IMG/VR virus record: IMGVR_UViG_3300032268_000986
Coordinates: 186,001 to 250,000 of that record
Length of the DNA: 64,000 bases
Strand: one strand, 5' to 3'
Shown here: piece after piece, positions 42,124 through 62,157 of the stretch
Layout of the letters: every line of letters begins with the position of its first letter
How positions within the stretch are numbered: position 1 is the stretch's first letter
Notes under the pieces: model-generated
Databases searched by the model: none
Told to the model about the DNA's origin: nothing
The model's input: only the letters and a program-made list of their open reading frames with translations
Made by a program: the position numbers and the translations under genes

Positions 42124-42173
42124 GGGTTCTCCTGTTTATTAGATAAGTATAACACTATTCTTGGAATAAAACA

Positions 42174-43757
42174 ATGCGTGACCTACTCAATTTACTCGAC
42201 AATGTACTAACTGAAGAAAATCTAGGGGCCAAAGAAATACCCGCTAGAAAAATGTCTACATTTACAGATCCCAAAACCAAAAAACAATTAAATCGAGCTG
42301 AGTTGTTTTTGTGGAAAGTCAAAAACAGATCACCTTTTGAACTGGTTGCAGGCGGATCAGTTGTGATTGACCCCAAGGAAGCACAAAATGTTGCCACTTG
42401 GATTATGACTGGTCCCACGGGTGTCATATCAATGCGCACCGCAGATGGTGGCACAGTAAAAAATACACAACTACAAAAGACTGGAGAATTTGGTAGTAAA
42501 GAAGCCGAACTTCTCAAAGTCAAGCCCAGTGACATTTTTCAAACAGACGAAAAAACTGAAGTGGCTGACCTAGGTAACAATATTAACGCACTGCTACAAG
42601 CCGGCGGTTTCCCTGCGTCTGAAATGTATAATGCGATTGCTGATAACCCGGCCCTGAAGTCCATGGGAAAACTGGGCGATGCAATAATTTACATGGCCAA
42701 TCAAGCCAACAACGGACAGGTCCCACAATTCCCAGACAACCTCACCAAGGATCAAACCAAGGCAATTGAACTATACGCCAGCGAGTATATTGGTGTGTTG
42801 GGCCTGGTCAGCGGAGCAGTGCCGTTCATGCGCGGTTCTCGAGAAGAATTTGAAGGATTTGTTGGTGGCGATCTCAAGAACATGATTATGTTTTTTCCCA
42901 AGGCATCCAACAATCCCTTGGCCGACAGTTTTAGTGTGGTGAATGATGAAACTGGACATGCTGTCAAGATCTCCAGCAAGGCCGGGGGTACTGGTGCTCC
43001 GCCCAGTCTGGGCAGTATGAAATTTCCTGCCGACGTGCAGAAAAAATATCCCGAAGCCACCAAGTTCCTGGCCCAGGCGCAGGACTCGTCGTTGAGTGCA
43101 TTTACTCAACCATTTGTCTTGATGAACTACCTGTACGAAATCAATCCCAACAAGGTGCCCAAGGCATATCGCAATCTAATGCCATTTACCCCGGCCTTGG
43201 TCAGCCAACTTGAAAGCAATATGAAATCTGACCAACCCGTTCCACGAGCCATCATGCGACAGTTTGAAAAACAGTTGAGTGAAAAGGTTCTTTACGGTGA
43301 TGCCACAGATGGTGGCAAAGCATGGTATGCTGTGATTCAAGACGTGATGCGAGCTGTCAACACTGACCGTGCTGTGCCCGAACTACGTGCTGCCTTGATT
43401 GAAAGTCTGGGCTACAACTTTGTTCAGCTGTATACCAAAGTCAAGGGCGGAAAACTAATAACTGAAGCATTTTGGCCTGCAAAGATTTCCGGACAGGTCA
43501 AACTCAAAAGCAAGGGATCAGCTGGCGAACTCAAGGGCAAAATGAGTGTGGAAATATCACCAGGTGGCGAGGACTTGTACGATCCTTACAATCTTGACGA
43601 CAAACGTGGTGACCTTGGCAGTATGGACAACACTGACGACACTGAAAAACTAGACCAAGTTACCAACAGCCCACGTCTGACTGGTCCCGGAGCGCAGGCC
43701 AGTAAAAAGTCTGATCCAGACTACAGTGAAAAAACTCTGGGCAGACGAAAAAAGTAA
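42174..43757 (+). CDS. late-expressed protein with PD-(D/E)xK-like motif
   Basis: TAAGTA upstream; NPLADSF...VKISSK; N-terminal MRDLLNLLDNVLTEE. Confidence 0.55.
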   Translation: MRDLLNLLDNVLTEENLGAKEIPARKMSTFTDPKTKKQLNRAELFLWKVKNRSPFELVAGGSVVIDPKEAQNVATWIMTGPTGVISMRTADGGTVKNTQLQKTGEFGSKEAELLKVKPSDIFQTDEKTEVADLGNNINALLQAGGFPASEMYNAIADNPALKSMGKLGDAIIYMANQANNGQVPQFPDNLTKDQTKAIELYASEYIGVLGLVSGAVPFMRGSREEFEGFVGGDLKNMIMFFPKASNNPLADSFSVVNDETGHAVKISSKAGGTGAPPSLGSMKFPADVQKKYPEATKFLAQAQDSSLSAFTQPFVLMNYLYEINPNKVPKAYRNLMPFTPALVSQLESNMKSDQPVPRAIMRQFEKQLSEKVLYGDATDGGKAWYAVIQDVMRAVNTDRAVPELRAALIESLGYNFVQLYTKVKGGKLITEAFWPAKISGQVKLKSKGSAGELKGKMSVEISPGGEDLYDPYNLDDKRGDLGSMDNTDDTEKLDQVTNSPRLTGPGAQASKKSDPDYSEKTLGRRKK

Positions 43758-43759
43758 AA

Positions 43760-44332
43760 TCATCGACGACTTATTTCGCTGATGGAGTCACACACATTTA
43801 GCGCCAGGGCTTCTTCGGCACTGAGCCACACATCATGTGGTGGCAACAGAGTTTTGCGTATTTCTTCTTGGCCAAGTCCAGTGCAGGCCTCGTAGTGTGC
43901 CAGCATGCGTTTGTGTGTGAGTTCAAACTCTTTCATGGTGGCAAACAGTTCATGTGCTTTGCCGTCTGACCCCCAGCTAAATTGATGACTCAAGATAGAT
44001 GTGTTGGGTGTCAGCACACGTCGGCCAGCGGTGCCTGCTAGAAAAATCAACAGGCCAGCTGATGCAATAGTGCCCAATCCCACGGTCTTGATTGGTATGT
44101 TGCTACTGTGCATGACGTCAATCAAGGCAAAGGCCGCGGACACATCTCCGCCTTCACTACAGATCATCAACAGCAATTCTTTGCGTTTTTTCTTGTTGAT
44201 GAAATTTTCATGCAAAACCCACTCGATTATGGGACGAATGCTTTCAGTGTCTACTGCGCCCATGAACACATACATGCCTGCATCCGCAAGCTGTTGACTG
44301 TGTGAATTTGTGGTTTCTGTTTCTGCTGTCAT
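43760..44332 (-). CDS. second, divergent ClpP-family protease
   Basis: ICSEGG, IASAG, ILSHQ, DVWLSAEEA. Confidence 0.85.
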   Translation of the reverse strand: MTAETETTNSHSQQLADAGMYVFMGAVDTESIRPIIEWVLHENFINKKKRKELLLMICSEGGDVSAAFALIDVMHSSNIPIKTVGLGTIASAGLLIFLAGTAGRRVLTPNTSILSHQFSWGSDGKAHELFATMKEFELTHKRMLAHYEACTGLGQEEIRKTLLPPHDVWLSAEEALALNVCDSISEISRR

Positions 44333-44352
44333 TGCATGCCCGTTTTTGGTAT

Positions 44353-45387
44353 TTAGCGACACTGGGATCTCCTGACTACATTAACTTCTGCTGAAGTGAC
44401 CTGTTCAATTTGATCAATTCCTATTTTTAATACTACATTTAATGTTTCTTTGCCTTGAATCTGGATGCGTCGGCTGCCAATCTCATTGAGATAACGGCTG
44501 CGATATTCACTCTGATCCAGCTCGGCTGCTGAGAAGCAGTACACCCGATCTCGACCCGTGGTGGTCTGCAGGGTCAAGCGATACATGGGTTCAGAATGCA
44601 CCATGTGACGGCGCATGATGTGCCAGGCCTGATCATCGTTGAACCAAGCACCGGGATTGTCGGCCACTAGATTTATATCCAGCACAATGCTGGCCGGCGC
44701 TGAGGCACAAGAATTTAGACCCGGATTGCATCGTGGGTACTGATTGATTGTATGCAGGGTATCTTGCATGGCTTGAATAAACTTCTTGTTCCAGGAAATG
44801 CGAAACGGAACCAAAAGATGTGCTTGTCGATTGCTGTCAAAATCCACCTTGACCGGTTGCAATCGCAGATCAAACGCTCGAGCAGGATAATCCTGCATCA
44901 CAGTGTTCAGCACCTGGTCGGCGCCCTGGCGTTGTTGCACAAGGGATCCGATTTGCACAGCCACACGATCACCGTTGATCTGTCCTGCTGTGGCACTGTT
45001 GTTGAGCAATCGGTTGGCAATGGCATTGTGAGCCACCCAGACTTCCATGACCACTCGCACGGATCTGCCCTGGTCCACACGCTCAACAATGTTGTAACGA
45101 TCAACCACACCTGAACTGTAGTTGATGATGTCTTCGCGCCCAATGCGATTGTTGCGCATCTCAGTTTCATTCAGCACCACAGTGCCCACAGCCTGCTCAA
45201 CTGCTAGCCTAAACGCCTGTTGCCGAGCCTGCTCAAAGTTGGGTGCTGTGGCTTCGACCTTGATGTAGTACACTGGCACTCGATCCAAGACCAAGTACTG
45301 TGCCGCAGTCAGCACCAGCCCTGCCACCTGAGCCTGAGCAGTGGCTGTTGCTGTGGCCAGCAACAGAGCCGCAAAATAGCGTTTCAT
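44353..45387 (-). CDS. secreted protein (FlgT-N/LPP20-like N-terminus)
   Basis: signal peptide; A...A...AVEQAVGT.V..ET. Confidence 0.55.
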   Translation of the reverse strand: MKRYFAALLLATATATAQAQVAGLVLTAAQYLVLDRVPVYYIKVEATAPNFEQARQQAFRLAVEQAVGTVVLNETEMRNNRIGREDIINYSSGVVDRYNIVERVDQGRSVRVVMEVWVAHNAIANRLLNNSATAGQINGDRVAVQIGSLVQQRQGADQVLNTVMQDYPARAFDLRLQPVKVDFDSNRQAHLLVPFRISWNKKFIQAMQDTLHTINQYPRCNPGLNSCASAPASIVLDINLVADNPGAWFNDDQAWHIMRRHMVHSEPMYRLTLQTTTGRDRVYCFSAAELDQSEYRSRYLNEIGSRRIQIQGKETLNVVLKIGIDQIEQVTSAEVNVVRRSQCR

Positions 45388-47408: not shown

Positions 47409-47695
47409 TACATCATCATTCTAACCAGGCCAACTGTGTCTATTGTGGTCAGCAATAGATAGTTAGCCAGCATGCCAAAAGATTTCCTAGTCCAACTAGC
47501 CCAAGCATACATGGCACAGCCAAGAATCCAAACAGGATAAAGAGCAAGAAGCGGAGGCGTGGGGACTGTGAGTGCCATAGTAACACTGCAACCAATGCTA
47601 GCAGCCCAAGCAAGCAACTCAATAACAAAGCGAACTCGGTTAGATCTAAAATCATCTCGTATCCAATCAAAGGTGGGTTTTAAAAGTGTGTTCAT
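47408..47695 (-). CDS. small multi-TM membrane protein
   Basis: three hydrophobic helices. Confidence 0.7.
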   Translation of the reverse strand: MNTLLKPTFDWIRDDFRSNRVRFVIELLAWAASIGCSVTMALTVPTPPLLALYPVWILGCAMYAWASWTRKSFGMLANYLLLTTIDTVGLVRMMM

Positions 47696-48852
47696 GATCT
47701 ACTGGGAAAATAATCTTGTTGTTGCCCTGGTCGGTTCAGGTCCAATGTCATGCAATGAACTCCCCCGTCCCAAAAATAAGAGTGCGGAATGTCTAGCACA
47801 TGCACAGCGATTCCGTGCTTCTCCAGTCTAGAAATTAGTTTGGTGTTTTGCACACTGGAGATGACATTTTTTTCATTGACCACTAGCATGTTCACATCAA
47901 ATATGCTTTCTCCTGATGATCCAATCCAGGAATTGAAACTAGCTTCCACAGTTGCTATCAGCTCTTGGTCTTGTTCATGTCCGGGAATCCACCAACGTGA
48001 TTTTGTTTTTTTAAAAAACTCTTTGTACTTGCTGTATTGAGCAGCCATTGCATTTGTGTTTTTGACATATATCACTTCCCAGTCTGGAAAATACGTGTCA
48101 TAGTCGATTACACAGTTGGGATCATCATGTGCCACAATCAGCCCCGGACACACAATACAAAATATGCCATCGGTGTGCCCAACCGAGTCAATTATGTGAT
48201 TGCGATAATTTGGAAATTCTGCATCGTACATGTTTTTTAATTGACCCATGTCCCGATCCTGGATTGATGTTCCAAAATACAAATCCTGTCCTGCCCTGGT
48301 TAGTGCGCCGCCATCAGACCGGTCCCAGTCAATTGTTTGATTTCCTTGCTGTTTGACAAATTGCAAGATATCACCGTGGGTGTCGTTGAAATGAGTGAAA
48401 AAACACATTTCTTGCGCCAGGCCAAATTGATCATATGCTTCAGTTATGTGCGATTCAGGGGCATGGGCTAAGAAATCATAAACGTTGTTGTACCTCTCCC
48501 AGGCCGGATCTGCTATGTTGTTGTAGTATTTTTTCCAGTATTGTGCGCTCCAGTCTTGATAATAAAATTTATCACCAATCATCATCATGTGATTACGCGG
48601 TTGTAGTGGTGGTACAAACACATTTTTTTCATGTGCAGGATACTGCAAATTCACGTTTGGCCTGAGTACTTGTACCCCAAGCTCGTGCAGTTTGTTTGCC
48701 AACAACTGTGAGCCATGTTCGGTCTCAATAGCCATTCTTTCAAACAAATCTCTCACACGGGGCACAGTGATCCAAGCATAGTATTCAGGAGGCAGTGTGC
48801 GGCCAACAATGCATGTTTTCAGTGGATCCCAGTCTTGATTCACACTAAGCAT
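47692..48852 (-). CDS. amidinotransferase-family protein
   Basis: WDPLKTCIVG, PRN, DGG, HTDG, WDGGVHCMT. Confidence 0.85.
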   Translation of the reverse strand: MLSVNQDWDPLKTCIVGRTLPPEYYAWITVPRVRDLFERMAIETEHGSQLLANKLHELGVQVLRPNVNLQYPAHEKNVFVPPLQPRNHMMMIGDKFYYQDWSAQYWKKYYNNIADPAWERYNNVYDFLAHAPESHITEAYDQFGLAQEMCFFTHFNDTHGDILQFVKQQGNQTIDWDRSDGGALTRAGQDLYFGTSIQDRDMGQLKNMYDAEFPNYRNHIIDSVGHTDGIFCIVCPGLIVAHDDPNCVIDYDTYFPDWEVIYVKNTNAMAAQYSKYKEFFKKTKSRWWIPGHEQDQELIATVEASFNSWIGSSGESIFDVNMLVVNEKNVISSVQNTKLISRLEKHGIAVHVLDIPHSYFWDGGVHCMTLDLNRPGQQQDYFPSRS

Positions 48853-49876
48853 GTTGTTGGTATCGTTGATAAACTTGTTCGCTGGCTAGATTCTTGCCCT
48901 TGGCCTCGCACTGGATATCAAAGTCTTCAGCAAACTCCAAGGCCCAATCTGTCACAGCGTCATTCCAGTAAAAGTCGCTGTGTGCTCGTAACTTTTGCTT
49001 CTTATAACCTGCATCAAGAAGGGCAGCAAGGTCTGGGAGAACTCGTTGATCATGATTGACCAAAATATCTTCGCGACTAACTGAGTAGTGAAGAGCAGGA
49101 CGAACACCACGCCAAGAGTCAATAACCCTTGCCACACGATGATCTTGAGGGGAGATGTATTCGCCGGAATTGATCCAATGATGGTGTATGTCCAGTACGA
49201 GAGCCACATGCTCAGCCACAAGTAAAGTAGTATCAAGTCCATTGCTTATTTCATCATTTTCAATAGTTATGAGGTTGCGAGCCTCGGGTGTTAATTTACC
49301 CAGTGTGCGCAAGAACTTGGCCGGGCCACCTTTGCCCGAAAGATGCACATTGATTTTAAAACCATGATCATGCCAGGTAGCGCCATAGCCCATCCAACGT
49401 GCCATGTCTGCATGATACTCAAATTCTGCAATGCTACGTTCTACAATTTCGTCACTTTCCGACGCCAGCACACAGAACTGCCCGGGATGGAACGATATGC
49501 GCACACCCAGGCGACGAGCAGTCTCGCCAACAGGTGCAAAGATCTGGGCACAGTGCTCTTGTATTTCTGTGCGTTGCCACCAGCTGATCCAGTCTTTCTC
49601 AGTGTAGCCCTGCAACATTTCTGAGCCCAATCGAACCATACGCCGTTCGGGCGGCAGTGTGCCCACACGCTCGATCATGCGAACGGCTGCGGCAGCATTG
49701 TGATTCATGATATCCCATTGGCGTTGTTCAGCTTCGCTTTTGTGCTCGCGAAGCCAGCGCATAGTGGTTGAACGCCCGTTAAGGTCCCGGTCCTTTGCAT
49801 TGACCTTCATGCCGCCGCATTCGGACGGGTCATTGAGCCATTTGCAACAGAAGCCAATTCGAGTATATGTATTCAT
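48845..49876 (-). CDS. uvsE: UV damage endonuclease UvsE/UVDE
   Basis: RIGFCC, SFHPGQF, NVH, IENDE, LDIHHH, AHSD, EAKGK; start MNTYTR. Confidence 0.9.
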   Translation of the reverse strand: MNTYTRIGFCCKWLNDPSECGGMKVNAKDRDLNGRSTTMRWLREHKSEAEQRQWDIMNHNAAAAVRMIERVGTLPPERRMVRLGSEMLQGYTEKDWISWWQRTEIQEHCAQIFAPVGETARRLGVRISFHPGQFCVLASESDEIVERSIAEFEYHADMARWMGYGATWHDHGFKINVHLSGKGGPAKFLRTLGKLTPEARNLITIENDEISNGLDTTLLVAEHVALVLDIHHHWINSGEYISPQDHRVARVIDSWRGVRPALHYSVSREDILVNHDQRVLPDLAALLDAGYKKQKLRAHSDFYWNDAVTDWALEFAEDFDIQCEAKGKNLASEQVYQRYQQHA

Positions 49877-49947
49877 GCTGTATTGTAGCACAGATTTGCA
49901 ATTATTGTCAAGCCTTGACATAAATACTTCATTATAGGACCCCAAGC

Positions 49948-50361
49948 ATGTACGTTACTATCAACACCTACAACAACGAAATTGACACTCCAATTTTGGC
50001 CAATGACATTGAAACTACATACCTACAAATTTTTGAAAAAAGATTTGAACTTGGTCTAGTAGACGGCCAAGGTTTTACTTTCATGCAAAAGGATACCGTT
50101 GATGATAGTTGGTATTCCCGTGCGGCATGGGCTGCTAGTATAACATCTAACGAAGCAATACATGGCAAGAGTCAGATCGGTGACACGGCAAAAGAGTTTG
50201 CGGAATCAAGAGTTTATTACTCACAGCGCCGTGCATGGAATACCCAGGAATCAGCTCAAGCCTATGTGGATTTTATCAATCAATTAAACTCGCCTGCTTG
50301 GTCCGCCACGTACGAAGGATTTGACGAGTCAATTCAGAATGATGGGTCAAGTCTGCTTTAA
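49948..50361 (+). CDS. hypothetical protein
   Basis: 137 aa; TAAATA and AGGA upstream. Confidence 0.6.
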   Translation: MYVTINTYNNEIDTPILANDIETTYLQIFEKRFELGLVDGQGFTFMQKDTVDDSWYSRAAWAASITSNEAIHGKSQIGDTAKEFAESRVYYSQRRAWNTQESAQAYVDFINQLNSPAWSATYEGFDESIQNDGSSLL

Positions 50362-51278
50362 TTGCTTCTGACCAAGTCCAAGGTAACACAATGAAATCCT
50401 CCGCCCAGTGTTCTGCTGTGGCGGAGTTCCAATGGGACGGTGGTGAAATTCCATTGCTCCAGTTTACGAATCAGTTCGGCTTGATGTTTGTCCACAATCA
50501 CAGTGTGCGGGTCAACCACTAACATGTTCATGGCAATCCATTTGGAAGCATAGGGATACTGATAAAAGCCCTGAGCCACAACTTCATCAACATAGATCTT
50601 GTCCCAGGTTTTGAACACCTGGGGACAGTTGTTTTCATTCACACGGGCAGCATTCAACATCACCAGCCCCTCTCGCAAGGGCACCACAGTTGAGTCAATG
50701 TGTACTCCAGCATAGAAATTGCATAACTCAATTTCAACACTGGGAAATACTTTGCACAACCAGTTGTAGGCTGCTCGATTTCCGCTGTCTGATTCCAAAA
50801 ACAGCATTTTGTCACCCAAGCGACAAACATTGGCAGCATCCAGAGTCAATCCTTCGTTGCGAGGCATAAAATGGTAATGCTCAGCCTGATCCACAATGTC
50901 ATGATAGCATTGCAGTTCCATGTCTCTGCAGGGATACATCATGGCAGGATCCACAACAGTGCTGCCATGAATCAGCAGTCGATCTCGTGGACAATAATTG
51001 TACATGCCATCATGAGTTTGGAAATTCATGGGAGTTGGACGTTCTACCTTGACACCCAGGCTCATCAGGGTCGTTGCCAGACCATCCAAATCTTCATTGG
51101 CTTCGTCAATGATCCACTGTGGCACTGCACCCGACGGCACCGGTGTTTCTTTCCACGAAGTTTTTTTACTTTCCTGAGCAAACACTGGGTCATGCCGGGG
51201 CCAGTTGGCCCAACTGGCATCGCCGACTACAATCTTTTTTAGAGGATCCCACTCGTTAAATGTTGAAATCATATCCAT
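50358..51278 (-). CDS. amidinotransferase (StrB1/AGAT-like)
   Basis: NEWDPLKKIVVG, CPRD, DAAN, HIDST, LGGGFHCVTLD. Confidence 0.9.
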   Translation of the reverse strand: MDMISTFNEWDPLKKIVVGDASWANWPRHDPVFAQESKKTSWKETPVPSGAVPQWIIDEANEDLDGLATTLMSLGVKVERPTPMNFQTHDGMYNYCPRDRLLIHGSTVVDPAMMYPCRDMELQCYHDIVDQAEHYHFMPRNEGLTLDAANVCRLGDKMLFLESDSGNRAAYNWLCKVFPSVEIELCNFYAGVHIDSTVVPLREGLVMLNAARVNENNCPQVFKTWDKIYVDEVVAQGFYQYPYASKWIAMNMLVVDPHTVIVDKHQAELIRKLEQWNFTTVPLELRHSRTLGGGFHCVTLDLVRSN

Positions 51279-51787
51279 CCTGTTATTTGCAGTGTGTATC
51301 TTGGGTCAATGCCCATGTTGGCCGCCAGATGCGGTGTATCGTATGTCCACTCTACCACATCGCCTGCTTGCCACTCAGTCACAGGCACGCCATTGCCTTC
51401 AAAGTAGTGTCCGGACCGCCAGTCCTCCAAGAACACAATGGCTCTGTGAATACGATGTTGTTGTCCCTGTAGCTTGAACAAATCAATATACTTCACATAT
51501 AGATCCCCATGAGTGGGGAGAATTGTACCTGTGCCCATTCTGTAGTAACTGGTACCAATGTCTTTCCACCCTTTTTCCCGGTACAGTTCAACAAACTGAT
51601 GATTCCAACTGGGCTGGGGACTGCGCATGTCGCACATGTCACCAGTGAATTGATTGGCATAACCCAGTGCCAACCAAGCCTGCAGGTTGTCCACATCGTT
51701 GAATGTTTCGTTGATGTAGTTGAGACCTTTGAACTCGTCGTCCCAGAACTTGGTGATATGGTACTTAGACAGCTCGTGTGTTGCCAT
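51269..51787 (-). CDS. Fe(II)/2-oxoglutarate oxygenase-like protein
   Basis: LPTHGD (HxD) ... PHLAAN.G..PRYTLQ; start uncertain (51787 or 51799). Confidence 0.75.
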   Translation of the reverse strand: MATHELSKYHITKFWDDEFKGLNYINETFNDVDNLQAWLALGYANQFTGDMCDMRSPQPSWNHQFVELYREKGWKDIGTSYYRMGTGTILPTHGDLYVKYIDLFKLQGQQHRIHRAIVFLEDWRSGHYFEGNGVPVTEWQAGDVVEWTYDTPHLAANMGIDPRYTLQITGWI

Positions 51788-53003
51788 AGTGTATGACATT
51801 GACTGTGTTGGTTGATTCTAGTTTGCGCCATGGGTCAACAATTATGCTGCCCGGCAAAATGTCACAATATGGTTTTGTGTCTGCTTGCTCGCCGGTGTAT
51901 TCGTATGTGATTTTACGATTGTGTGCCCATAATATAACACTGGGCCCAGTCAGTTCTGAAATGACTTCTGTTGCATCATCTGCCAGGGGATCTATGTATC
52001 TGACATTGAATCCCAGTTGTTTGACATAGTGCCCAACCAGGGTTGAGTATGATCCAATACAATATTCAACGTCTGGTTTGTATGCTTTGCCGTGTATCAC
52101 AACAGGCAAATTATATTTCTTGGCTTGTTCAACCAAGAACTTGGCAAGGTTTTCTGCCTGTACTTCTCTAGCATGCATCACAGTGTCAAACAGATCGTAG
52201 CCAATGTTGTATTCCTGTGCCAACCAGCGCAGTGCAATATTGTCACGTGGATGGCAAGCACCCGCATCGCCCATGCCAGCTGTCATGTACTTGGGCCCCA
52301 TGATGCGCATGGTGCTTCGAGCCAAGGCATTTGTGACCACGTCAACGTTGATGTTGCCAATTTTTAATGCAAAGTCCTGGATCATGTTCACAAGACCCAC
52401 CTTGGCTGAAATAAATGTGTTGTAGAAGATCTTGATGGCTTCGCACTCGTCCCAGGTGCCAACTTCGTAACGAGGATCATTTTCCATCACTGTTTTGTAC
52501 AGTTCGATCAGCTCACCTGCGATGCCTGTCAAACTGCCGTCCTCGGTACCAATCATGACCATTTCAGGATTGACCATGTCCCATTTTACCGACCCCATGG
52601 CAATGAGATATGGGTTGTAAACAAATTCATGTTGTGGATCCAGCAGGGGCACAAACTTGCGGCGTGTGGTACCCGGCAACACTGTGCTGATCAACACAAC
52701 TTTTTTGGGCGATGTTGCATACCGGTTGATGTTGTTGATGGCATCAATCACAGCGTCATGGCCGAAGTCTCGGGGTTCCATGTGGCTTGACGGCACTGAT
52801 CCATCATAGCCCTCGGTGTGCGGTGTTGGCACAGCCACAAAGATCCAGTCACTGCTGTTGACCAATTCTTCAATGCCGCATACTTTGACCAGGTCACTGG
52901 TGCGTGGGTAAATATCGTAACCCCAAACTTTGTGCTTTTCTGCCATTACTTCAGCACAATCAAGGCCAAGTTTTCCAATACCAATGAATCCAATTTTTTT
53001 CAT
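51765..53003 (-). CDS. UDP-glucose/GDP-mannose 6-dehydrogenase family
   Basis: GIGKLG, VAVPTP, STVLPGTT, E.IK...N, GACHPRD, AYKP. Confidence 0.9.
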   Translation of the reverse strand: MKKIGFIGIGKLGLDCAEVMAEKHKVWGYDIYPRTSDLVKVCGIEELVNSSDWIFVAVPTPHTEGYDGSVPSSHMEPRDFGHDAVIDAINNINRYATSPKKVVLISTVLPGTTRRKFVPLLDPQHEFVYNPYLIAMGSVKWDMVNPEMVMIGTEDGSLTGIAGELIELYKTVMENDPRYEVGTWDECEAIKIFYNTFISAKVGLVNMIQDFALKIGNINVDVVTNALARSTMRIMGPKYMTAGMGDAGACHPRDNIALRWLAQEYNIGYDLFDTVMHAREVQAENLAKFLVEQAKKYNLPVVIHGKAYKPDVEYCIGSYSTLVGHYVKQLGFNVRYIDPLADDATEVISELTGPSVILWAHNRKITYEYTGEQADTKPYCDILPGSIIVDPWRKLESTNTVNVIHYGNTRAV

Positions 53004-53006
53004 ACT

Positions 53007-54287
53007 ATGAGTGTTCCTTTAGATAGATTATACAATTTCTTGCATGCGGTCAGCGACCAGGATATAATAATTTATCGCTGGCATGTGCCCGGCTCAAGAA
53101 AACTTGAACACTGTACACCCCTGTGCCCATTGCCCCAGGATCGTGTGAAAAAATTCAGTACCATGCACATGGTCTGTCATGACCAAGAACCCTTGTTTTT
53201 TGATCAGTGGGAACCAGCAAAATTACAACCATTGTTCCTGGGGCCTGAGCATAAATCTGGGCCTCGTGACATACCCAACACACCGTACTCGGTACTGATG
53301 AATGCGGTTTCCGGAGAGTTCTTCTTACACGATCGTGTGCTGTTGTTACACAGTGAGCAGCGCAGCCAAGATCTCGACCAATTTGAAGCCGATGGCGCAG
53401 TGGGATGCTACTGGTGGAGTCATGCTGTGATTGCAAGAGACTGGTATCGATATGCCGAACTGGATCCAAAATTGCAAGTTGAAAAACAAGCCAAAAAAGA
53501 TTTCTTAATCTATAACCGTGCATGGGCAGGCACCCGAGAATACCGACTCAAATTTGCCGAGATGTTGATCAACCATGGTCTTTCCAGTCATTGCCAAATG
53601 GGGTTTGCTGCAACTGACGCCGGAGTTGATTATCGCGATCATCAATATCACAACACAGTATTTGGCATCAATCGCAGTGATCTTGAACAGCATTTTGTTG
53701 CCAATCATTCTCCACCTGAATCTTCAGCAGACTATGTGTCACAAGACTATGTGTCAACTGGCATAGAAGTTGTGCTAGAAACACTATTCGATGACTCACG
53801 TTGGCACTTGACTGAAAAAAGTCTGCGCCCCATAGCCTGCGGGCACCCGTTTATATTGGCAGCAACTCCAGGCAGCTTGGAATATCTGCGCAGTTACGGG
53901 TTCCAAACCTTTGAAGGCATAATTGACGAAAGTTATGACCAAGAATCTGATCCAGTAAAACGCCTGGAAAAAATCACCAAACTCATGCAAGACATTGCTG
54001 GATTACCCACACACGAAAAACATCTTTTGTGGGCACACATGCAAGTACGGGCAGATCATAATCGGCGTAGATTTTTCAGCCAGGAATTTCATGATCAAGT
54101 AATTGGCGAATTTTGTCAGAATCTCAATACAGCCGTGACGACCATGCAACAGTACGCCACGGCTGCACAGTGGCGCAGTTACATGCGTGAATTTGGGCCT
54201 GACATCATGTGTGCGCCCGAGGCAGACACTAGACAAGATGTGGTTGGTAAATGGCTAAGAATTTGGGCAGCACAGCAAGATAAGTAA
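53007..54287 (+). CDS. glycosyltransferase-like protein (GT10-like C-terminus)
   Basis: VVLET....HLTEK.LRPI..GHPF....GSL.YLR.YGF.TF...DESYD; start MSVPLD. Confidence 0.55.
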   Translation: MSVPLDRLYNFLHAVSDQDIIIYRWHVPGSRKLEHCTPLCPLPQDRVKKFSTMHMVCHDQEPLFFDQWEPAKLQPLFLGPEHKSGPRDIPNTPYSVLMNAVSGEFFLHDRVLLLHSEQRSQDLDQFEADGAVGCYWWSHAVIARDWYRYAELDPKLQVEKQAKKDFLIYNRAWAGTREYRLKFAEMLINHGLSSHCQMGFAATDAGVDYRDHQYHNTVFGINRSDLEQHFVANHSPPESSADYVSQDYVSTGIEVVLETLFDDSRWHLTEKSLRPIACGHPFILAATPGSLEYLRSYGFQTFEGIIDESYDQESDPVKRLEKITKLMQDIAGLPTHEKHLLWAHMQVRADHNRRRFFSQEFHDQVIGEFCQNLNTAVTTMQQYATAAQWRSYMREFGPDIMCAPEADTRQDVVGKWLRIWAAQQDK

Positions 54288-54290: not shown

Positions 54291-55055
54291 ATGCAAGCCA
54301 AAACTTATAGATCTATCTTTGTCAGCGATGTACACCTGGGCACACGAGACTGCAAGGCCGAGCAGTTGAACAATTTTCTCAAACACAACACTTGTTTTAC
54401 ACTGTATCTAGTGGGTGACATAATTGATGCTTGGAAAATACAACAAAATCAACTGCGCTGGAAACAGAGCCACACCAATGTGGTACGAAGAGTGCTGGGT
54501 CATGCCAAGCGAGGAACTCGAGTGGTCTACGTGGCCGGCAATCATGATGAATTTTTGCGTCCCATGATTCCATATGCTGCCAGCTTTGGCAGCATAGAGA
54601 TATGCAATCAAACCGAACACATAGGTGCTGATGGCAAGCACTACTTGGTCACACACGGTGACATGTTTGATGGTATCACCAGACTGGCGCCATGGCTGGC
54701 ATTTCTAGGTGACAAAGCATATGATTTTATTCTTTCCATGAACAGCAGATTCAATTGGATAAGACATCGACTGGGATTTGGCTACTGGAGCCTGAGCAAG
54801 TTTCTCAAATACCGTGTGAAAAAAGCAGTTGATTTTGTATTCAAGTTTGAAGAAAATCTAGCAGGCTATTGTAAAAAACGTGGGTTTGACGGAGTGATCT
54901 GTGGACACATACATCATGCAGAAATAAAAGAGATCAACGGTGTCATGTACATGAATGACGGCGACTGGGTAGAGTCAATGACTGCCTTGGTCGAACATCA
55001 TGACGGGCAGTGGGAAATCGTTACCTGGACCACAGCACATGATAACAAAACCTAG
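54291..55055 (+). CDS. LpxH2/PlcP-like metallophosphoesterase (phospholipase C)
   Basis: SDVHLG, LYLVGDIID.W, GNHDE, HGD.FD, GVICGHIH, Y.NDGDWVES. Confidence 0.85.
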   Translation: MQAKTYRSIFVSDVHLGTRDCKAEQLNNFLKHNTCFTLYLVGDIIDAWKIQQNQLRWKQSHTNVVRRVLGHAKRGTRVVYVAGNHDEFLRPMIPYAASFGSIEICNQTEHIGADGKHYLVTHGDMFDGITRLAPWLAFLGDKAYDFILSMNSRFNWIRHRLGFGYWSLSKFLKYRVKKAVDFVFKFEENLAGYCKKRGFDGVICGHIHHAEIKEINGVMYMNDGDWVESMTALVEHHDGQWEIVTWTTAHDNKT

Positions 55056-55686
55056 GATAGCAATATTTTTAAATCATCCTGAATGTTCGGCGCACTGTTG
55101 TGTTGGCATGTATGAAGCCTTGCATCCACACTATCAAGTTAGATTCTTCAACCGAGATCAAATCAATTCTAGATTGTTTAAAAATCTAGACATCATTGCA
55201 TTTCCCGGGGGCATTGGTGACAGTGACACCTTTGACAAATTGGTAAAACCACGAGCCGGCTACATCAAGGACTACATCAACAATGGCGGACGTTATCTGG
55301 GAATATGCATGGGTGCATACTGGGCCGGGCATCACTACTTGAACCTGCTACATGATGCAACCGCAGAACAATATATAAAAAGACCCAATGCTGATGTGCG
55401 CCGCAGTTTTGGAACAGTTTCCAAGATAACCTGGAAAGAGCAACAAGAACACATGTACTTTTATGATGGATGCAGTTTGATTGGCGACGAAAGTCAATTT
55501 GACATCATTGCCAGGTATCCAAATCATGACCCCATGGCCATTGTTCAGAATCGCATAGGTGTGGTTGGCTGTCATCCCGAGTCCTTGCCCAGCTGGTATG
55601 ACAAGCCACACCTAAAGCCAAATTGGCATAACTATCGACATCATGAATTGTTGTTGAACTTTACTAATGAACTGCTAGCAAGATGA
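55039..55686 (+). CDS. BPL_N/class I GATase-like protein
   Basis: FPGG.G, YLGICMGAY nucleophile elbow, HPE. Confidence 0.75.
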   Translation: MITKPRIAIFLNHPECSAHCCVGMYEALHPHYQVRFFNRDQINSRLFKNLDIIAFPGGIGDSDTFDKLVKPRAGYIKDYINNGGRYLGICMGAYWAGHHYLNLLHDATAEQYIKRPNADVRRSFGTVSKITWKEQQEHMYFYDGCSLIGDESQFDIIARYPNHDPMAIVQNRIGVVGCHPESLPSWYDKPHLKPNWHNYRHHELLLNFTNELLAR

Positions 55687-56678
55687 AAACTGTTTTAATC
55701 ATAACAGATAACTTACCGGATCAAATAAATGGCGTTGTCACAACATACAAGAATATCGAGGCGTGTGCGGTTCTGGACGGTTATCGCGTTGTTTACCTTA
55801 CTCCCGGGGACTTCGGCTACATTGATTGCCCTATGTACCACGAAGTCAAGATTGCCTATCCCCGGAACCTGGGCAAGAAGATTGCGGAGATCAGTGCGGA
55901 TTATATCCATGTCGCCACAGAGGGTCCTTTGGGTTTGTGGGCTAGAAAGTATCTTTCAAAACATCGTATTAGGCACAATACTGCTTATCATACTAAGTTT
56001 CCTGAAGGACTCAAAACTCTTTTAGGCATCCCTGAACACATCACATGGCGCTATGTGCGTTGGTTTCACAAGCATTCGGGCAAGGTGCTGACCACGACAG
56101 ATACCATGGTACAAGATCTCAGATCTCATGGGTTTGATGGTGAAGTTATTCCCTGGACTCGCGGTGTTGACCGCAAGGTATTCAATGCTCGTCAACGGCA
56201 CGAATACAGCGACATGACCACCTTGGTATGTGTGAGCCGAGTGAGCAAAGAAAAAAATCTTGAAGACTTTTTTGAGCTAGAATATCCCAACTGTCGCAAG
56301 ATCATGGTGGGCGACGGACCCATGTTGGAAACTTATAAAAAACAATATCCCGATGTTGAGTTTGTGGGATTCAAGACTGGAATAGATTTGGCCATATACT
56401 ATGCCAATGCTGATGTATTTGTTTTTCCCAGTCGCTGGGAAACATTTGGATTGGTCATGATCGAAGCCATGGCCTGCGGCACTCCAGTGGCTGCATATCC
56501 AGTGACTGGTCCCTTGGATGTGGTTGAGCCCGGAGTCACTGGGTTCATGGATCAGCACCTGGCATCAGCAGTGCATCGATGCATGGGGCTTGATCGATCC
56601 AGGGTATTGCAAGGCAGCCAACGCTGGTCATGGGATCGTGCCTGGGAGATTTTTAGAGATAACCTAGTCAGCCCTTGA
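55683..56678 (+). CDS. GT4 glycosyltransferase (Agt-like glycolipid synthase)
   Basis: TD...QINGVV, IHVATEGPLG..AR, YHTKFPE, RGVD, RVSKEKN, ETFGLVMIEAMACG. Confidence 0.85.
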   Translation: MKTVLIITDNLPDQINGVVTTYKNIEACAVLDGYRVVYLTPGDFGYIDCPMYHEVKIAYPRNLGKKIAEISADYIHVATEGPLGLWARKYLSKHRIRHNTAYHTKFPEGLKTLLGIPEHITWRYVRWFHKHSGKVLTTTDTMVQDLRSHGFDGEVIPWTRGVDRKVFNARQRHEYSDMTTLVCVSRVSKEKNLEDFFELEYPNCRKIMVGDGPMLETYKKQYPDVEFVGFKTGIDLAIYYANADVFVFPSRWETFGLVMIEAMACGTPVAAYPVTGPLDVVEPGVTGFMDQHLASAVHRCMGLDRSRVLQGSQRWSWDRAWEIFRDNLVSP

Positions 56679-57045: not shown

Positions 57046-57837
57046 ATGCAACTAGCGTTTGATTTAATTTCTGACTTACACATTGACACATGGCCCACAG
57101 AGTTTTCCTGGTCTGAGCAGGCCACCAGTCCTATCTGTGTGGTGGCTGGTGATGTTTGTACTGATCGTGCCCAACTGGTAACGGTACTCAAGCATCTGGG
57201 ACAGTGTTATCAAGCAGTGTTCTATATTGATGGCAACAGCGAGCATCGTGATTATCTTGACAACCTAGGTGCCAGTTATAATGACCTTGCCCGGCAAATT
57301 CGACGTATCCCAAATGTGGTTTACCTGCAGGACAATGTGATTGTGATTGATGGCGTTGCAATTTTAGGCACCAATGGTTGGTGGGGATTTGACTTTGACT
57401 TGTCCATAGACCCTGAGCAATCTGAACTCTGGTACCGAGAGCGTCACCAGTTGAACCCTGCTGATACTCTTGCCATACGAAAAATGAGCAATACCGATGC
57501 CACGTACATGATCAACAGTGTCAGCAGATTGCAAACACACGCCGATGTCAAACACATTGTCATGGTCACTCACACTGTGCCTGATCCTGCATTGATAGCA
57601 CACGACATTGATCTTGACGGTAGCATGAGATTCAATGTCATGGGCAATCGGTTCATGATGCAGGCGCTGGCCGCTGACACTGAGAAAAAAATACACACCT
57701 GGTGCTTTGGACACTATCATGGATCAGTGGATCAGACCCGGGCCAATGTTAGATTTGTCAACAACTGTCGGGGTCGAGGTGACACAGACTATTCTCAATA
57801 TGTGTACCACCCTCGACGCATTGTGATCAACTATTAA
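57046..57837 (+). CDS. metallophosphoesterase
   Basis: SDLH, AGD, GNSE (His replaced), THTVP, FGHYH. Confidence 0.8.
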   Translation: MQLAFDLISDLHIDTWPTEFSWSEQATSPICVVAGDVCTDRAQLVTVLKHLGQCYQAVFYIDGNSEHRDYLDNLGASYNDLARQIRRIPNVVYLQDNVIVIDGVAILGTNGWWGFDFDLSIDPEQSELWYRERHQLNPADTLAIRKMSNTDATYMINSVSRLQTHADVKHIVMVTHTVPDPALIAHDIDLDGSMRFNVMGNRFMMQALAADTEKKIHTWCFGHYHGSVDQTRANVRFVNNCRGRGDTDYSQYVYHPRRIVINY

Positions 57838-58142
57838 TTTTCTTCAGGTTCTAGTTTGATTTGCAAAGGATAACTTTGCGAGCGAGCACTTATTGTAACT
57901 TCAATACCTTTTTGTTCAGCCAGTTCGTATGGTAACACCGCTACCACAGCCGAACCAGCTTCATGGATATCCACAGTGATACGTTCAGCAGTTTCTGCGT
58001 TGTAGTTGAAATATTCAATCAGACTTTCAATCACAAATTCCATAGTGGTTTGATTGTCATTGATATACACCACACGATACATTGGAGGCTCCTTGATATC
58101 CGTGGCAGGTTTAATTTTAATAACTGAGTCAGTTTGTGGCAT
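57834..58142 (-). CDS. clpS: ClpS adaptor
   Basis: PPMYRVVYINDNQTTMEFV..L...F....A..I...IH..G.AVV...YE.AEQK...YPL. Confidence 0.92.
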   Translation of the reverse strand: MPQTDSVIKIKPATDIKEPPMYRVVYINDNQTTMEFVIESLIEYFNYNAETAERITVDIHEAGSAVVAVLPYELAEQKGIEVTISARSQSYPLQIKLEPEEN

Positions 58143-58198
58143 TTTTTGTCCTTGTTGCAGTGGCAGCACTGTGCTGCCACTGTATTTACACAATTATA

Positions 58199-58651
58199 TT
58201 AGGCTGTGTATGTGATAGCAATGGCCTTTGGCTTGGCTTCCTCAGGAACTTCACGTTTTAAGTGAACACTCAAGATACCAAGTTCAAGATGTGCATTGGT
58301 GATTTCCACATGATCTGCCAACTGAAATTCTCTACGGAAATCTCTGTTGCTGATGCCTTTGTGCAAGTAGTTTGGCACAATCTTTTCGCTGTCAGGCTGA
58401 TATTCTTTGCCTTCAATGATCAAGAACTTTTTGTCCTTGGTAACTGAAAGATTGTCAAGTCCAAATCCGGCCACCGCAAGACTTATCATGTACTCATCTT
58501 CATTGATTTGTACAATGTTGTAGGGTGGATAGTTTGTTGAGCTTTGCTGAGCACTCACACGCATGAGTTCATCAAACATGTTATCAAAACCGATACCAAA
58601 TTTGGTGAGTGTGGGAATGTCGAAAGATCGAAGGGTGAGAGTTTTTGTCAT
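58199..58651 (-). CDS. small heat-shock protein (IbpA/Hsp20)
   Basis: IGFD, NYPPYNI, LAVAGF, YLHKGIS.R.F.R.F.LA, GIL...L...PEE.KP. Confidence 0.95.
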   Translation of the reverse strand: MTKTLTLRSFDIPTLTKFGIGFDNMFDELMRVSAQQSSTNYPPYNIVQINEDEYMISLAVAGFGLDNLSVTKDKKFLIIEGKEYQPDSEKIVPNYLHKGISNRDFRREFQLADHVEITNAHLELGILSVHLKREVPEEAKPKAIAITYTA

Positions 58652-58710
58652 TTGTTTTCTCCTTTATTAAGCAAGATGACTTTGATGTAGCCCCACCATG
58701 GGCACTACAT
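58652..58710 (-). promoter_or_regulatory. ROSE-like RNA thermometer in the hsp20 leader
   Basis: 5' hairpin plus UCUUGCU-N-AAGGAGA. Confidence 0.55.
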
Positions 58711-58776
58711 GTTTATTTATTATACACGAAAAAAAAAACTATATTTTGTTATTTAGGTCAAACTAAATGTTTGTTA

Positions 58777-59001
58777 TTAGAACAATTTTTTAGGAAGCTC
58801 TTGCTCGCGTAGTTTTCGCTGCCAGCGTTTTTTTGCAGCAGCGGCCTTGAGTTTGCGTTCAGTAGTGGGCTTGACGTAGCATTCACGGCTGCGCAAATCA
58901 TCCAGCAGTCCCGATGTTTGAATTTTTTTCTTGAACTTGCGCAGGGCCTTGTCTACGTTGCCATCTTGCACCAGTACTGATCTACCGTGTAATTTAGTCA
59001 T
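58777..59001 (-). CDS. rpsU: ribosomal protein bS21
   Basis: VDKALRKFKKK....G.L..LRSRECYVKPTTERK. Confidence 0.9.
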   Translation of the reverse strand: MTKLHGRSVLVQDGNVDKALRKFKKKIQTSGLLDDLRSRECYVKPTTERKLKAAAAKKRWQRKLREQELPKKLF

Positions 59002-61596: not shown

Positions 61597-61600
61597 GCAT

Positions 61601-62107: not shown

Positions 62108-62112
62108 ATGTA

Positions 62113-62141
62113 ATTATACACACAGATCAGTGAAGTGTCAA
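62113..62141 (-). promoter_or_regulatory. sigma70 consensus promoter
   Basis: TTGACA-17-TATAAT. Confidence 0.8.
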
Positions 62142-62157
62142 TTGATTTGGAAACTTA

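What the first reader, a model, noticed from the sequence alone, without database searches (positions are those of the whole stretch)
47692..54287. Two amidinotransferases with an Fe/2OG oxygenase, Ugd and a GT-like gene: a possible guanidino-sugar pathway
Seen: both amidinotransferases keep Asp-His-Cys triad positions. One (50358-51278) is coupled to an HxD...H oxygenase and Ugd and faces a GT-like gene. A radical SAM and a TylF-type methyltransferase occur elsewhere in the window. Established: StrB1-type enzymes transfer amidino groups from Arg to amino-cyclitols or sugars. Inference: the phage may make an unusual amidino/hydroxylated glycan to decorate virion fibres, DNA or the host surface.
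Basis: inference. Interest (0 to 1): 0.6.

Follow-up and report, generated by a model that had tools for sequence, protein, structure and literature searches.

The report
Phage amidinotransferase-oxygenase-glycosyltransferase sugar cassette
A 343-kb freshwater phage carries a tightly packed, widely conserved gene set (sugar dehydrogenase, small iron/2-oxoglutarate oxygenase, streptomycin-type amidinotransferase, facing a glycosyltransferase) that most likely builds and attaches an unusual nitrogen-rich (guanidino) sugar; its chemistry and target have not been studied.

Summary
Gene 50358-51278 is a full-length StrB1-type amidinotransferase (PDB 1bwd, E 1.3e-66). Gene 51269-51799 has no Pfam match but folds (pLDDT 93) as an Fe/2OG oxygenase with invariant H97-x-D99...H157...R167. 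Gene 51765-53003 is an NDP-sugar 6-dehydrogenase. The facing gene really starts at 53007 and is a GT-B glycosyltransferase.

In 80 related viral loci the oxygenase is followed by the amidinotransferase in 79. The GT faces it in 78 and Ugd is present in 63. In more distant phages the oxygenase is fused to the GT's donor-binding half, with the amidinotransferase next door. There the set sits among DegT-type sugar aminotransferases, carbamoyl- and methyltransferases and radical SAM enzymes.

The second amidinotransferase (47692-48852) is a divergent paralogue found in about 5 of 80 loci. UvdE, which lies between the two, is a DNA-repair gene. Neither belongs to the core.

Best model, inferred rather than shown: a nucleotide sugar is oxidised, aminated in trans, amidinated from arginine and transferred to a virion or host-surface acceptor. 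A DNA-modification route and an aminocyclitol route both lack their expected genes. The cassette is uncharacterised and widespread: a new variant of phage glycan-tailoring clusters.

The parts
50358..51278 (-). AT306: StrB1-type L-arginine amidinotransferase, 306 aa, the last gene of the Ugd-oxygenase-AT operon
   Evidence: PDB 1bwd E 1.3e-66. Invariant D99, R118, D147, H193, D195, H296, C297. Follows the oxygenase in 79 of 80 viral loci.
51269..51799 (-). Minimal Fe(II)/2-oxoglutarate oxygenase, 176 aa, from a family with no Pfam model
   Evidence: AF2 pLDDT 93. Foldseek best hit 4j25 prolyl-4-hydroxylase, E 2e-6. VIA 4iw3 Z 13.1, 149 aligned, rmsd 3.2. Invariant H97, D99, H157, R167. 502 clusters at 50% identity.
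51765..53003 (-). NDP-sugar 6-dehydrogenase (Ugd-like), 412 aa, the first gene of the operon
   Evidence: Pfam PF03721 and PF00984. phrog_9148 E 1.9e-89. Solved Ugd enzymes E about 1e-13 with the catalytic Cys aligned. 57% identical to Synechococcus phage Bellamy Ugd. Present in 63 of 80 loci.
53007..54287 (+). GT-B fold glycosyltransferase-like protein, 426 aa, GT10-like T269-E270-K271 motif. Divergent from Ugd, with the two start codons 3 nt apart.
   Evidence: AF2 pLDDT 89.7. VIA T4 BGT Z 11.8, POGLUT2 Z 11.0, alpha-1,3-FucT Z 10.2. Faces the oxygenase in 78 of 80 loci. Its C-terminal half is fused to the oxygenase in other phages. Atlas lead to GT10 at 0.79.
47692..48852 (-). AT386: divergent pentein-fold, amidinotransferase-like enzyme. 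An accessory gene that overlaps the end of UvdE by 8 nt.
   Evidence: StrB1 E 2.4e-9. phrog_25854, shared with AT306. Triad positions D180, H226, C367. Two further paralogues in the genome. Found in only about 5 of 80 loci.
48845..49945 (-). UvdE UV-damage endonuclease. A syntenic neighbour, probably not part of the pathway.
   Evidence: Pfam PF03851 E 1.1e-28. phrog_8420 E 6e-69. Downstream of the AT in 68 of 80 loci at variable distance.
54291..55055 (+). Calcineurin-like metallophosphoesterase, the first gene of a movable trio downstream of the GT
   Evidence: Pfam PF00149 E 1e-9. Travels with the next two genes in 14-21 of 80 loci, at varying positions.
55000..55686 (+). Class-I glutamine-amidotransferase-like (BPL_N/GATase) protein
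   Evidence: Pfam PF09825 E 4e-13 and PF00117 E 3e-7.
55683..56678 (+). GT4 family glycosyltransferase
   Evidence: Pfam PF00534 E 1e-24 and PF13439 E 4e-13.
49948..50361 (+). 137-aa ORF in the gap between UvdE and AT306. Its coding status is uncertain.
   Evidence: No family hit. Related loci carry variable small ORFs or gaps at this position.

Best explanation
The core of the finding is a conserved phage sugar-tailoring cassette. It consists of an overlapping-gene operon (Ugd, then a minimal Fe/2OG oxygenase, then a StrB1-type amidinotransferase) and a divergently transcribed GT-B (GT10-like) glycosyltransferase.

Proposed mechanism:
1. Ugd makes an NDP-uronic acid. This is shown only at family level.
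2. The oxygenase oxidises or hydroxylates the sugar or a sugar-derived intermediate. One chemically economical option is C-4 oxidation of UDP-GlcA to a keto sugar, as the SDR domain of ArnA does. This step is inferred.
3. A DegT-like aminotransferase encoded elsewhere in the genome installs an amine. Inferred.
4. AT306 transfers an amidino group from L-arginine to that amine through its Cys297 thio-amidine intermediate, giving a guanidino sugar and ornithine. The mechanism is established for the family. The acceptor is inferred.
5. The GT-B enzyme transfers the product to a macromolecular acceptor, most likely a virion protein or the host envelope. Inferred.

AT386 and UvdE are accessory neighbours, not core parts.
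For: Enzyme identities.

Translational coupling: overlaps of 35 and 10 nt.

Synteny in 80 IMG/VR loci where the oxygenase is 64-88% identical: AT in 79, GT in 78, Ugd in 63.

Fusion evidence: the oxygenase domain is fused to the donor-binding half of GT-like proteins in at least 10 cluster representatives. hhalign gives 98.8% probability.

The AT is directly adjacent to those fusions at only 34-40% identity. The same oxygenase-AT pair occurs in cultured Synechococcus phage S-SCSM2R, at 28% and 37.5% identity, amid four GTs and a short DegT.

Association with sugar-nucleotide tailoring genes:
- short DegT next to or near the AT in clade 2, in L111-L118, in L179 and in S-SCSM2R
- Ugd directly upstream of the oxygenase in L179 as well
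- carbamoyltransferase, methyltransferases and B12-radical SAM in the same cluster
- in this genome a short DegT / AT386 paralogue / 4,6-dehydratase trio, plus a full DegT with a dehydratase

StrB1, the closest characterised enzyme (228 bits, against 114 or less for any other amidinotransferase), amidinates an amine on a phosphorylated six-membered polyol ring.
Against: - No enzymatic step was tested. The substrates of all four enzymes are inferred.
- No aminotransferase lies in the window cassette.
- Ugd is absent from 17 of 80 loci, so UDP-GlcA may not be obligatory, or the host supplies it.
- The oxygenase's best structural neighbours are protein prolyl hydroxylases, not sugar-acting enzymes, although PolD, PasI, EvdO2, AviO1 and HygX also score Z 10-12.
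- Most of the synteny comes from related phages and partly reflects shared ancestry.
- No natural NDP-guanidino sugar is known to me (own knowledge).
Confidence: 0.5

Rival explanations
1. Protein hydroxylation followed by glycosylation. The P4H-like oxygenase hydroxylates Pro or Lys residues of a phage protein, and the partnered or fused GT-B enzyme glycosylates the new hydroxyl, using UDP-GlcA from Ugd. A candidate target is the proline-rich giant repeat protein that borders the cluster in clade 2 and in this genome's second cluster. The amidinotransferase would tailor the glycan or convert lysines to homoarginine.
For: - The top structural matches are prolyl hydroxylases: P. putida P4H Z 13.1, PHDs 12.8, chlorovirus vCPH 11.9, mimivirus lysyl hydroxylase 10.1.
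- The GT model also matches protein O-glucosyltransferases POGLUT1 and POGLUT2, Z 10-11.
- An oxygenase::GT fusion follows the same logic as collagen LH3 and mimivirus L230 (own knowledge).
- A 2109-aa repeat protein ends the clade-2 cluster. A 1456-aa homologue with about 65-aa repeats containing PDPxDPPY lies beside GT-like paralogues in this genome.
- In S-SCSM2R an amidinotransferase and a prolyl dihydroxylase were detected in purified virions (PMC12801897).
Against: - It does not explain the tight, deep conservation of the oxygenase-amidinotransferase pair, nor the StrB1-like (small-molecule) character of AT306.
- The Z-scores do not separate protein-acting from small-molecule 2OG oxygenases.
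- The repeat protein is about 170 kb away from this cassette, and its role is unknown: no Pfam, PHROG or PDB hit.
Confidence: 0.2
2. A diffusible small molecule. The cassette would make an aminoglycoside-like or other glycosylated guanidino metabolite (the 'antibiotic synthesis genes' reading), or simply a guanidino acid such as guanidinoacetate, as an auxiliary metabolic function.
For: - AT306 is closest to the streptomycin enzyme StrB1.
- The extended clusters contain the enzyme types found in aminoglycoside pathways: DegT, B12-radical SAM, carbamoyltransferase, 2OG oxygenase, GT-B.
- The S-SCSM2R authors read the homologue as an antibiotic-synthesis gene (PMC12801897).
Against: - The genome has no sugar-phosphate cyclase and no inositol-1-phosphate synthase.
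- No export or self-resistance genes were seen nearby.
- The constant GT partner, with a fast-evolving sequence (median 46% identity against 71-81% for its neighbours), fits a macromolecular acceptor better.
- A plain glycine amidinotransferase role does not explain the oxygenase or the GT.
Confidence: 0.12
3. DNA hypermodification. The GT-B enzyme glycosylates a modified base, as T4 glucosyltransferases do, and the oxygenase and amidinotransferase build or decorate the adduct.
For: - T4 beta-glucosyltransferase is the top structural match of the GT (Z 11.8) and T4 alpha-GT scores 9.7.
- A DNA-repair nuclease (UvdE) is a constant neighbour.
- ALKBH-type DNA oxygenases appear among the fold matches at Z about 11.
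Against: - The genome has no ThyA-family hydroxymethylase (control positive).
- No Tet/JBP hit was found, though the control was silent, so this is weak evidence.
- The BGT score is tied with protein- and glycan-acting GT-B enzymes.
- The surrounding gene content is nucleotide-sugar tailoring, not nucleotide metabolism.
Confidence: 0.08

Closest known systems
StrB1, L-arginine:inosamine-phosphate amidinotransferase of Streptomyces griseus (PDB 1bwd)
   Same: Alignable along its full length (E 1.3e-66), with all catalytic and arginine-binding residues conserved. Presumably uses the same ping-pong amidino transfer through a cysteine.
   Different: AT306 is about 40 residues shorter: a segment between residues 129 and 143 is missing relative to StrB1 139-174. 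It is phage-encoded and has no aminocyclitol pathway around it. It is always paired with a mini 2OG oxygenase, which the roughly 40%-identical StrB1-type genes of Streptomyces and cyanobacteria lack.
ArnA/ArnB/Ugd (PmrE) pathway to UDP-4-amino-4-deoxy-L-arabinose (own knowledge)
   Same: Same order of steps: Ugd, then C-4 oxidation, then a DegT-family aminotransferase, then N-modification, then transfer to an acceptor. Ugd and a DegT-like gene flank the oxygenase in locus L179.
   Different: Here the oxidising enzyme would be an Fe/2OG oxygenase, not an SDR. The N-modification would be amidination, not formylation. The transferase is a soluble GT-B, not the membrane GT-C ArnT. All of this is inferred.
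Hydroxylase-glycosyltransferase pairs or fusions acting on proteins: collagen LH3/PLOD, mimivirus L230, Skp1 P4H1-Gnt1 (own knowledge)
   Same: A 2OG oxygenase is physically fused to, or partnered with, a glycosyltransferase. The oxygenase fold is closest to prolyl hydroxylases.
   Different: The GT here is GT-B/GT10-like rather than GT-A. An amidinotransferase is an obligatory third partner. No target protein has been identified.
Glycan gene islands of T4-like cyanophages and pelagiphages: S-SCSM2R ORF305-310, Bellamy gp222-228, HTVC008M gp159-164
   Same: Homologous Ugd (47-57% identity) and oxygenase/AT (28% and 37.5%), embedded among GTs, carbamoyltransferase, NadE-like and methyltransferase genes.
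   Different: This is a 343-kb freshwater phage with no detectable similarity to cultured phages at DNA level. A large protein from elsewhere in the window (17945-21496) also has no tblastn match in cultured phages. The GT partner is a different, unannotated family that S-SCSM2R lacks.

Membership tests
Amidinotransferase family (AGAT/StrB1, pentein fold): AT306 | Full-length sequence homology to characterised amidinotransferases | tested here: met
   1bwd E 1.3e-66 covering residues 3-304. HsvA, SxtG and AGAT E 1e-25 to 5e-32. The Pfam ADI model does not score.
Amidinotransferase family (AGAT/StrB1, pentein fold): AT306 | Catalytic Cys-His-Asp triad and the Asp/Arg residues that hold arginine | tested here: met
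   D99, R118, D147, H193, D195, H296 and C297 are invariant across 10 members down to 36% identity.
Amidinotransferase family (AGAT/StrB1, pentein fold): AT306 | Arginine-dependent amidino transfer to an amine acceptor | not testable with these tools
   Needs an enzyme assay.
Amidinotransferase family: AT386 | Homology and triad | tested here: inconclusive
   StrB1 E 2.4e-9, but mainly over the last ~65 residues. D180, H226 and C367 align to the triad. There are large insertions. The data do not separate a transferase from a hydrolase of the same fold.
Fe(II)/2-oxoglutarate-dependent oxygenases | Double-stranded beta-helix fold | tested here: met
   AF2 pLDDT 93. 205 Foldseek matches at E<=1e-3, led by 2OG oxygenases. 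VIA Z 13.1 to 4iw3, and the listed neighbours at Z>=10 are almost all 2OG oxygenases.
Fe(II)/2-oxoglutarate-dependent oxygenases | HxD/E...H iron triad plus a basic residue for the 2OG C5 carboxylate | tested here: met
   D99, H157 and R167 are invariant and H97 is at least 90% conserved in 50 sequences. R167-x-T169 lies 10 residues after H157.
Fe(II)/2-oxoglutarate-dependent oxygenases | Match to a curated family model | tested here: not met
   No Pfam, NCBIfam or PHROG hit even at E 10. It is a family without a model.
UDP-glucose 6-dehydrogenase | Rossmann N-domain, and a central domain with the catalytic Cys | tested here: met
   PF03721 and PF00984. GxGxxG at residues 8-13. Cys250 aligns with the catalytic Cys of 7kws.
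UDP-glucose 6-dehydrogenase | Equivalog-level score and a C-terminal UDP-binding domain, which together indicate substrate identity | tested here: not met
   TIGR03026 scores 135 bits, below its cut-off of 189.8. All equivalog models score far below their cut-offs. PF03720 is not detected. The protein is therefore an NDP-sugar 6-dehydrogenase of unproven substrate.
GT-B glycosyltransferases (GT10-like) | Two Rossmann-like domains | tested here: met
   AF2 pLDDT 89.7. VIA Z 11.8 (T4 BGT, 271 residues aligned), and the matches at Z>=8 are almost all GT-B enzymes. Foldseek E-values are only 2e-3 or weaker.
GT-B glycosyltransferases (GT10-like) | Membership of a curated GT family | tested here: not met
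   No Pfam, PHROG or NCBIfam hit. The Atlas score to GT10 is 0.79, a lead only. The invariant E258 and T269-E270-K271 motif resembles the GT10 TEK motif (the resemblance is from own knowledge).
Streptomycin-type aminocyclitol pathway | A cyclitol-forming enzyme (inositol-1-phosphate synthase or a DHQ-synthase-type cyclase) alongside the amidinotransferase | tested here: not met
   PF07994 and PF01761 are absent from the 99%-complete genome, with controls positive.
Phage DNA hypermodification through 5-hydroxymethyl pyrimidines | A ThyA-family dNMP hydroxymethylase, or a Tet/JBP oxygenase | tested here: not met
   PF00303 absent, control positive. PF12851 absent, but the control was silent.

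The most novel reading that the evidence does not exclude
Aquatic phages encode the first natural pathway to a nucleotide-activated guanidino sugar. A new mini Fe/2OG oxygenase replaces the usual SDR in oxidising a uronic-acid nucleotide. A truncated DegT aminates the product. A StrB1-like enzyme amidinates it from arginine. A new GT10-like family then attaches the cationic sugar to a giant proline-rich repeat protein or other virion surface protein, changing adsorption or defence evasion.
Probability: 0.25. Interest if true: 0.8.

Novelty: new variant of a known kind. Interest (0 to 1): 0.58.

Why it matters
Phage-encoded glycan tailoring is known: chlorovirus capsid glycans, mycobacteriophage virion glycosylation, and the GT islands of cyanophages. 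This particular trio is different. It is an amidinotransferase, an unmodelled mini 2OG oxygenase and an unmodelled GT-B family, often with Ugd.

It is very abundant in freshwater and marine viromes. At 90% clustering there are 2,281 oxygenase, 4,318 GT and 6,891 amidinotransferase sequences, and the oxygenase alone forms 502 clusters at 50% identity. It has never been studied. The only published comment calls one homologue an 'antibiotic synthesis gene'.

If the model is right, it would add a new sugar chemistry (guanidino sugars) and give a function to two large families that have no curated model. It would also point to a cationic virion or host-surface decoration relevant to adsorption and defence. 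A cultured phage, S-SCSM2R, carries the oxygenase-AT pair, so the idea can be tested.

Tried and rejected
- Megablast of the region against cultured phages found nothing. tblastn of a 1183-aa window protein also found nothing, so the phage lineage and host remain unknown.
- Pfam, NCBIfam and PHROG scans gave nothing for the oxygenase or the GT.
- The HTVC008M gene next to Ugd (gp163) is not a homologue of the oxygenase.
Single proteins and alignment A4 were used instead.
There is therefore no complex evidence either way.
- The Atlas and PDB sequence searches did not identify the giant repeat protein.
- The promoter and terminator scan was no better than shuffled sequence.
- No RNA run holds the region, and read laying was not used.
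- The aminocyclitol route was considered and rejected. So was the hydroxymethyl-pyrimidine DNA route.
- AT386 and UvdE were rejected as core members.
- The close 'cellular' hits (62-78% identity) sit on MAG contigs that carry the phage cassette. They are best read as binned phage DNA, not bacterial homologues.

Full report
**Setting.** The window is bases 186001-250000 of a 342,865-bp IMG/VR virus record rated 99% complete. Near-identical DNA occurs only in freshwater and lake metagenomes, and no RNA run holds it. Cultured phages show no DNA similarity. The finding's neighbours in the window are accessory genes: two ClpP, ClpX, ClpS, HSP20, a SPASM/radical-SAM enzyme and a DNA ligase.

**Check of the observation.** The minus strand carries a run of overlapping genes.
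- Ugd, 51765-53003. It has the Pfam N-terminal and central domains, phrog_9148 at E 1.9e-89, and a catalytic Cys aligned to solved Ugd enzymes.
- A 176-aa protein, 51269-51799, overlapping Ugd by 35 nt.
- AT306, 50358-51278, overlapping the 176-aa gene by 10 nt.

AT306 matches StrB1 (1bwd) at E 1.3e-66 along its whole length, far better than HsvA, SxtG or AGAT. Its catalytic residues D99, R118, D147, H193, D195, H296 and C297 are invariant down to 36% identity.

The 176-aa protein has no hit in Pfam, NCBIfam or PHROGs. A 50-sequence alignment nevertheless shows invariant D99, H157 and R167 and nearly invariant H97. The AlphaFold model (pLDDT 93) matches Fe/2OG oxygenases: Foldseek best hit P. 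putida prolyl-4-hydroxylase at E 2e-6, VIA Z 13.1 with 149 residues aligned at rmsd 3.2.

The facing gene begins at 53007, not 52818. Its start codon lies 3 nt from that of Ugd. Its model (pLDDT 89.7) is a GT-B glycosyltransferase. VIA gives T4 beta-glucosyltransferase Z 11.8, POGLUT2 11.0 and alpha-1,3-fucosyltransferase 10.2; Foldseek alone is weak. An invariant E258 and T269-E270-K271 motif, together with an Atlas lead of 0.79, point towards GT10-like enzymes.

AT386 (47692-48852) is a distant pentein relative. StrB1 scores E 2.4e-9, mostly over the C-terminus. D180, H226 and C367 sit at the triad positions. Between the two amidinotransferases lies UvdE. The radical SAM gene (40263-41537) and the TylF-type methyltransferase (31261-32004) are also present.

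**What belongs together.** I fetched 80 viral loci through the oxygenase and located the window's genes in them by tblastn. AT306 follows the oxygenase in 79. The GT faces it in 78. UvdE is downstream in 68 at variable distance. Ugd is present in 63. AT386 appears in about 5.

These loci are related phages, so I looked further afield. An exhaustive HMMER search found 502 oxygenase clusters at 50% identity, several of them 520-1018 aa long. Those long proteins are fusions of the oxygenase domain with the C-terminal, donor-binding half of GT-like proteins. BLAST gives 29-39% identity and hhalign 98.8% probability over 108 residues including the (T/S)EK motif. On their contigs an AT306 homologue (34-40% identical) lies directly upstream.

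The oxygenase-AT pair also recurs elsewhere:
- in the cultured cyanophage S-SCSM2R, at 28% and 37.5% identity, amid four GTs, a short DegT and a radical SAM enzyme
- in a marine MAG contig arranged Ugd, oxygenase, short DegT, GTP cyclohydrolase, AT
- on two Bdellovibrionota MAG contigs, one of which was examined and has the pair next to an integrase

StrB1-type genes of Streptomyces and cyanobacteria, about 40% identical, lack the oxygenase and the GT. The deepest conserved unit is therefore oxygenase plus amidinotransferase. A GT partner is nearly always present, of this family in most lineages and of other GT families in S-SCSM2R. Ugd is frequent.

**Link to sugar chemistry.** A second phage clade carries one contiguous cluster, in this order:
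1. GT-like
2. Ugd fused to a methyltransferase
3. B12-radical SAM
4. short DegT
5. methyltransferase
6. AT
7. GT-like
8. oxygenase::GT fusion
9. a 251-aa protein
10. carbamoyltransferase
11. a 2109-aa repeat protein

The window's own genome holds the same components at two other sites.
- At 49-73 kb: five radical SAM/SPASM genes, GT-like paralogues, a carbamoyltransferase (58% identical to the clade-2 enzyme), a fourth pentein gene, a 1456-aa repeat protein, an epimerase/dehydratase and a full-length DegT.
- At 125-133 kb: a B12-radical SAM, a short DegT that keeps the Schiff-base lysine motif, an AT386 paralogue (40% identical) and a 4,6-dehydratase.

Ugd's closest cultured relatives, in Bellamy and HTVC008M, also sit among GTs, carbamoyltransferase, NadE-like and methyltransferase genes. 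The repeated pairing of amidinotransferases with DegT-type sugar aminotransferases and dehydratases is the strongest support for an amino-sugar acceptor.

**Mechanism (inferred).**
1. Ugd supplies an NDP-uronic acid.
2. The oxygenase oxidises or hydroxylates the sugar. C-4 oxidation, as in ArnA chemistry, would create the keto group that an aminotransferase needs.
3. A DegT-like enzyme, acting in trans, aminates it.
4. AT306 amidinates the amine from arginine.
5. The GT-B enzyme transfers the product.

Across 45 loci that hold all five genes, median identity is 81% for Ugd and UvdE, 73% for the AT, 71% for the oxygenase and only 46% for the GT. That pattern fits an enzyme that tracks a variable macromolecular acceptor.

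**Rivals.**
- A protein hydroxylation-then-glycosylation system. It is favoured by the prolyl-hydroxylase and POGLUT fold neighbours, by the fusion, and by the neighbouring proline-rich repeat protein. It is also consistent with the detection of an amidinotransferase and a prolyl dihydroxylase in S-SCSM2R virions (PMC12801897).
- A diffusible aminoglycoside-like metabolite. The lack of any cyclitol-forming enzyme argues against it.
- DNA hypermodification. The lack of a ThyA-type hydroxymethylase argues against it. No Tet/JBP hit was found either, but that control was silent.

**Literature.** Full-text searches found no study of this cassette. The only mention is the S-SCSM2R paper's annotation of ORF309 as an antibiotic-synthesis gene.

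**Limits.**
- No activity, expression or complex data exist.
- The word search sees only proteins of similar length. The fusions came from the exhaustive search.
- The host is unknown. Close hits in Haliscomenobacter, Terrimicrobiaceae, Legionella and Bacteroidetes MAGs are contigs that carry the phage cassette, and are best read as binned phage DNA.

**Verdict.** This is a widespread, uncharacterised variant of phage glycan-tailoring clusters with plausible new chemistry.

Noticed in passing
own genome G000:C1:49183-72837 (outside the window; loci L123, L126, L127): A second, larger modification cluster. It holds five radical SAM/SPASM genes, at least three GT-like paralogues, a carbamoyltransferase (61051-62526), a fourth pentein gene (63176-64219, with Ser instead of His before the Cys), a 1456-aa protein made of about 65-aa repeats (WxPDPxDPPYIYxFGNQW...PGATExKY) at 66449-70819, an epimerase/dehydratase and a full-length DegT.
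   Followed up: partly
own genome G000:C1:125044-132632 (locus L125): A B12-binding radical SAM, a truncated 189-aa DegT-like protein that keeps the PLP-lysine motif, an AT386 paralogue (40% identical) and a GDP-mannose-4,6-dehydratase-like gene lie side by side. The short DegT family recurs next to amidinotransferases in several phage lineages.
   Followed up: partly
window 53001-53009: The start codons of Ugd (minus strand) and the GT (plus strand) are only 3 nt apart. Any promoters of the divergent genes must therefore lie inside each other's coding sequence. In related loci the spacing is about 30-40 nt.
   Followed up: no
window 54291-56678: Metallophosphoesterase, GATase1-like and GT4 genes form a compact trio. 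In 14-21 of 80 related loci the trio turns up at different positions and orientations around the core cassette, so it behaves like a movable sub-module.
   Followed up: partly
window 40263-41537 and own genome C1:53299-59920: The radical SAM enzymes of this phage carry their SPASM domain N-terminal to the radical SAM core, the reverse of the usual order. There are at least five paralogues.
   Followed up: no
window 41530-44362 and 57834-60196: The phage encodes a complete Clp set (two ClpP, ClpX, ClpS) and an HSP20 around the cassette. This synteny is conserved in related 340-350-kb contigs.
   Followed up: no
L128 and L130 (NZ_JBBAKG010000110.1, NZ_JBBAKG010000031.1): Two contigs of one Haliscomenobacter MAG each carry the phage cassette, at 78% and 66% AT identity. 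This is either mis-binned phage DNA from two related phages or a hint about the host.
   Followed up: no
L093 (JGI contig of 697,313 bp): The same cassette and synteny sit on a contig about twice the length of this genome. It may be a concatemer or assembly duplication rather than a 700-kb phage.
   Followed up: no
L094:1871-3802: In the second clade Ugd is fused to a C-terminal SAM-methyltransferase domain, giving a 643-aa protein.
   Followed up: no
loci L011-L090 compared with the window: The GT is far more divergent between related phages (median 46% identity) than its neighbours Ugd, UvdE, AT and the oxygenase (71-81%).
   Followed up: yes
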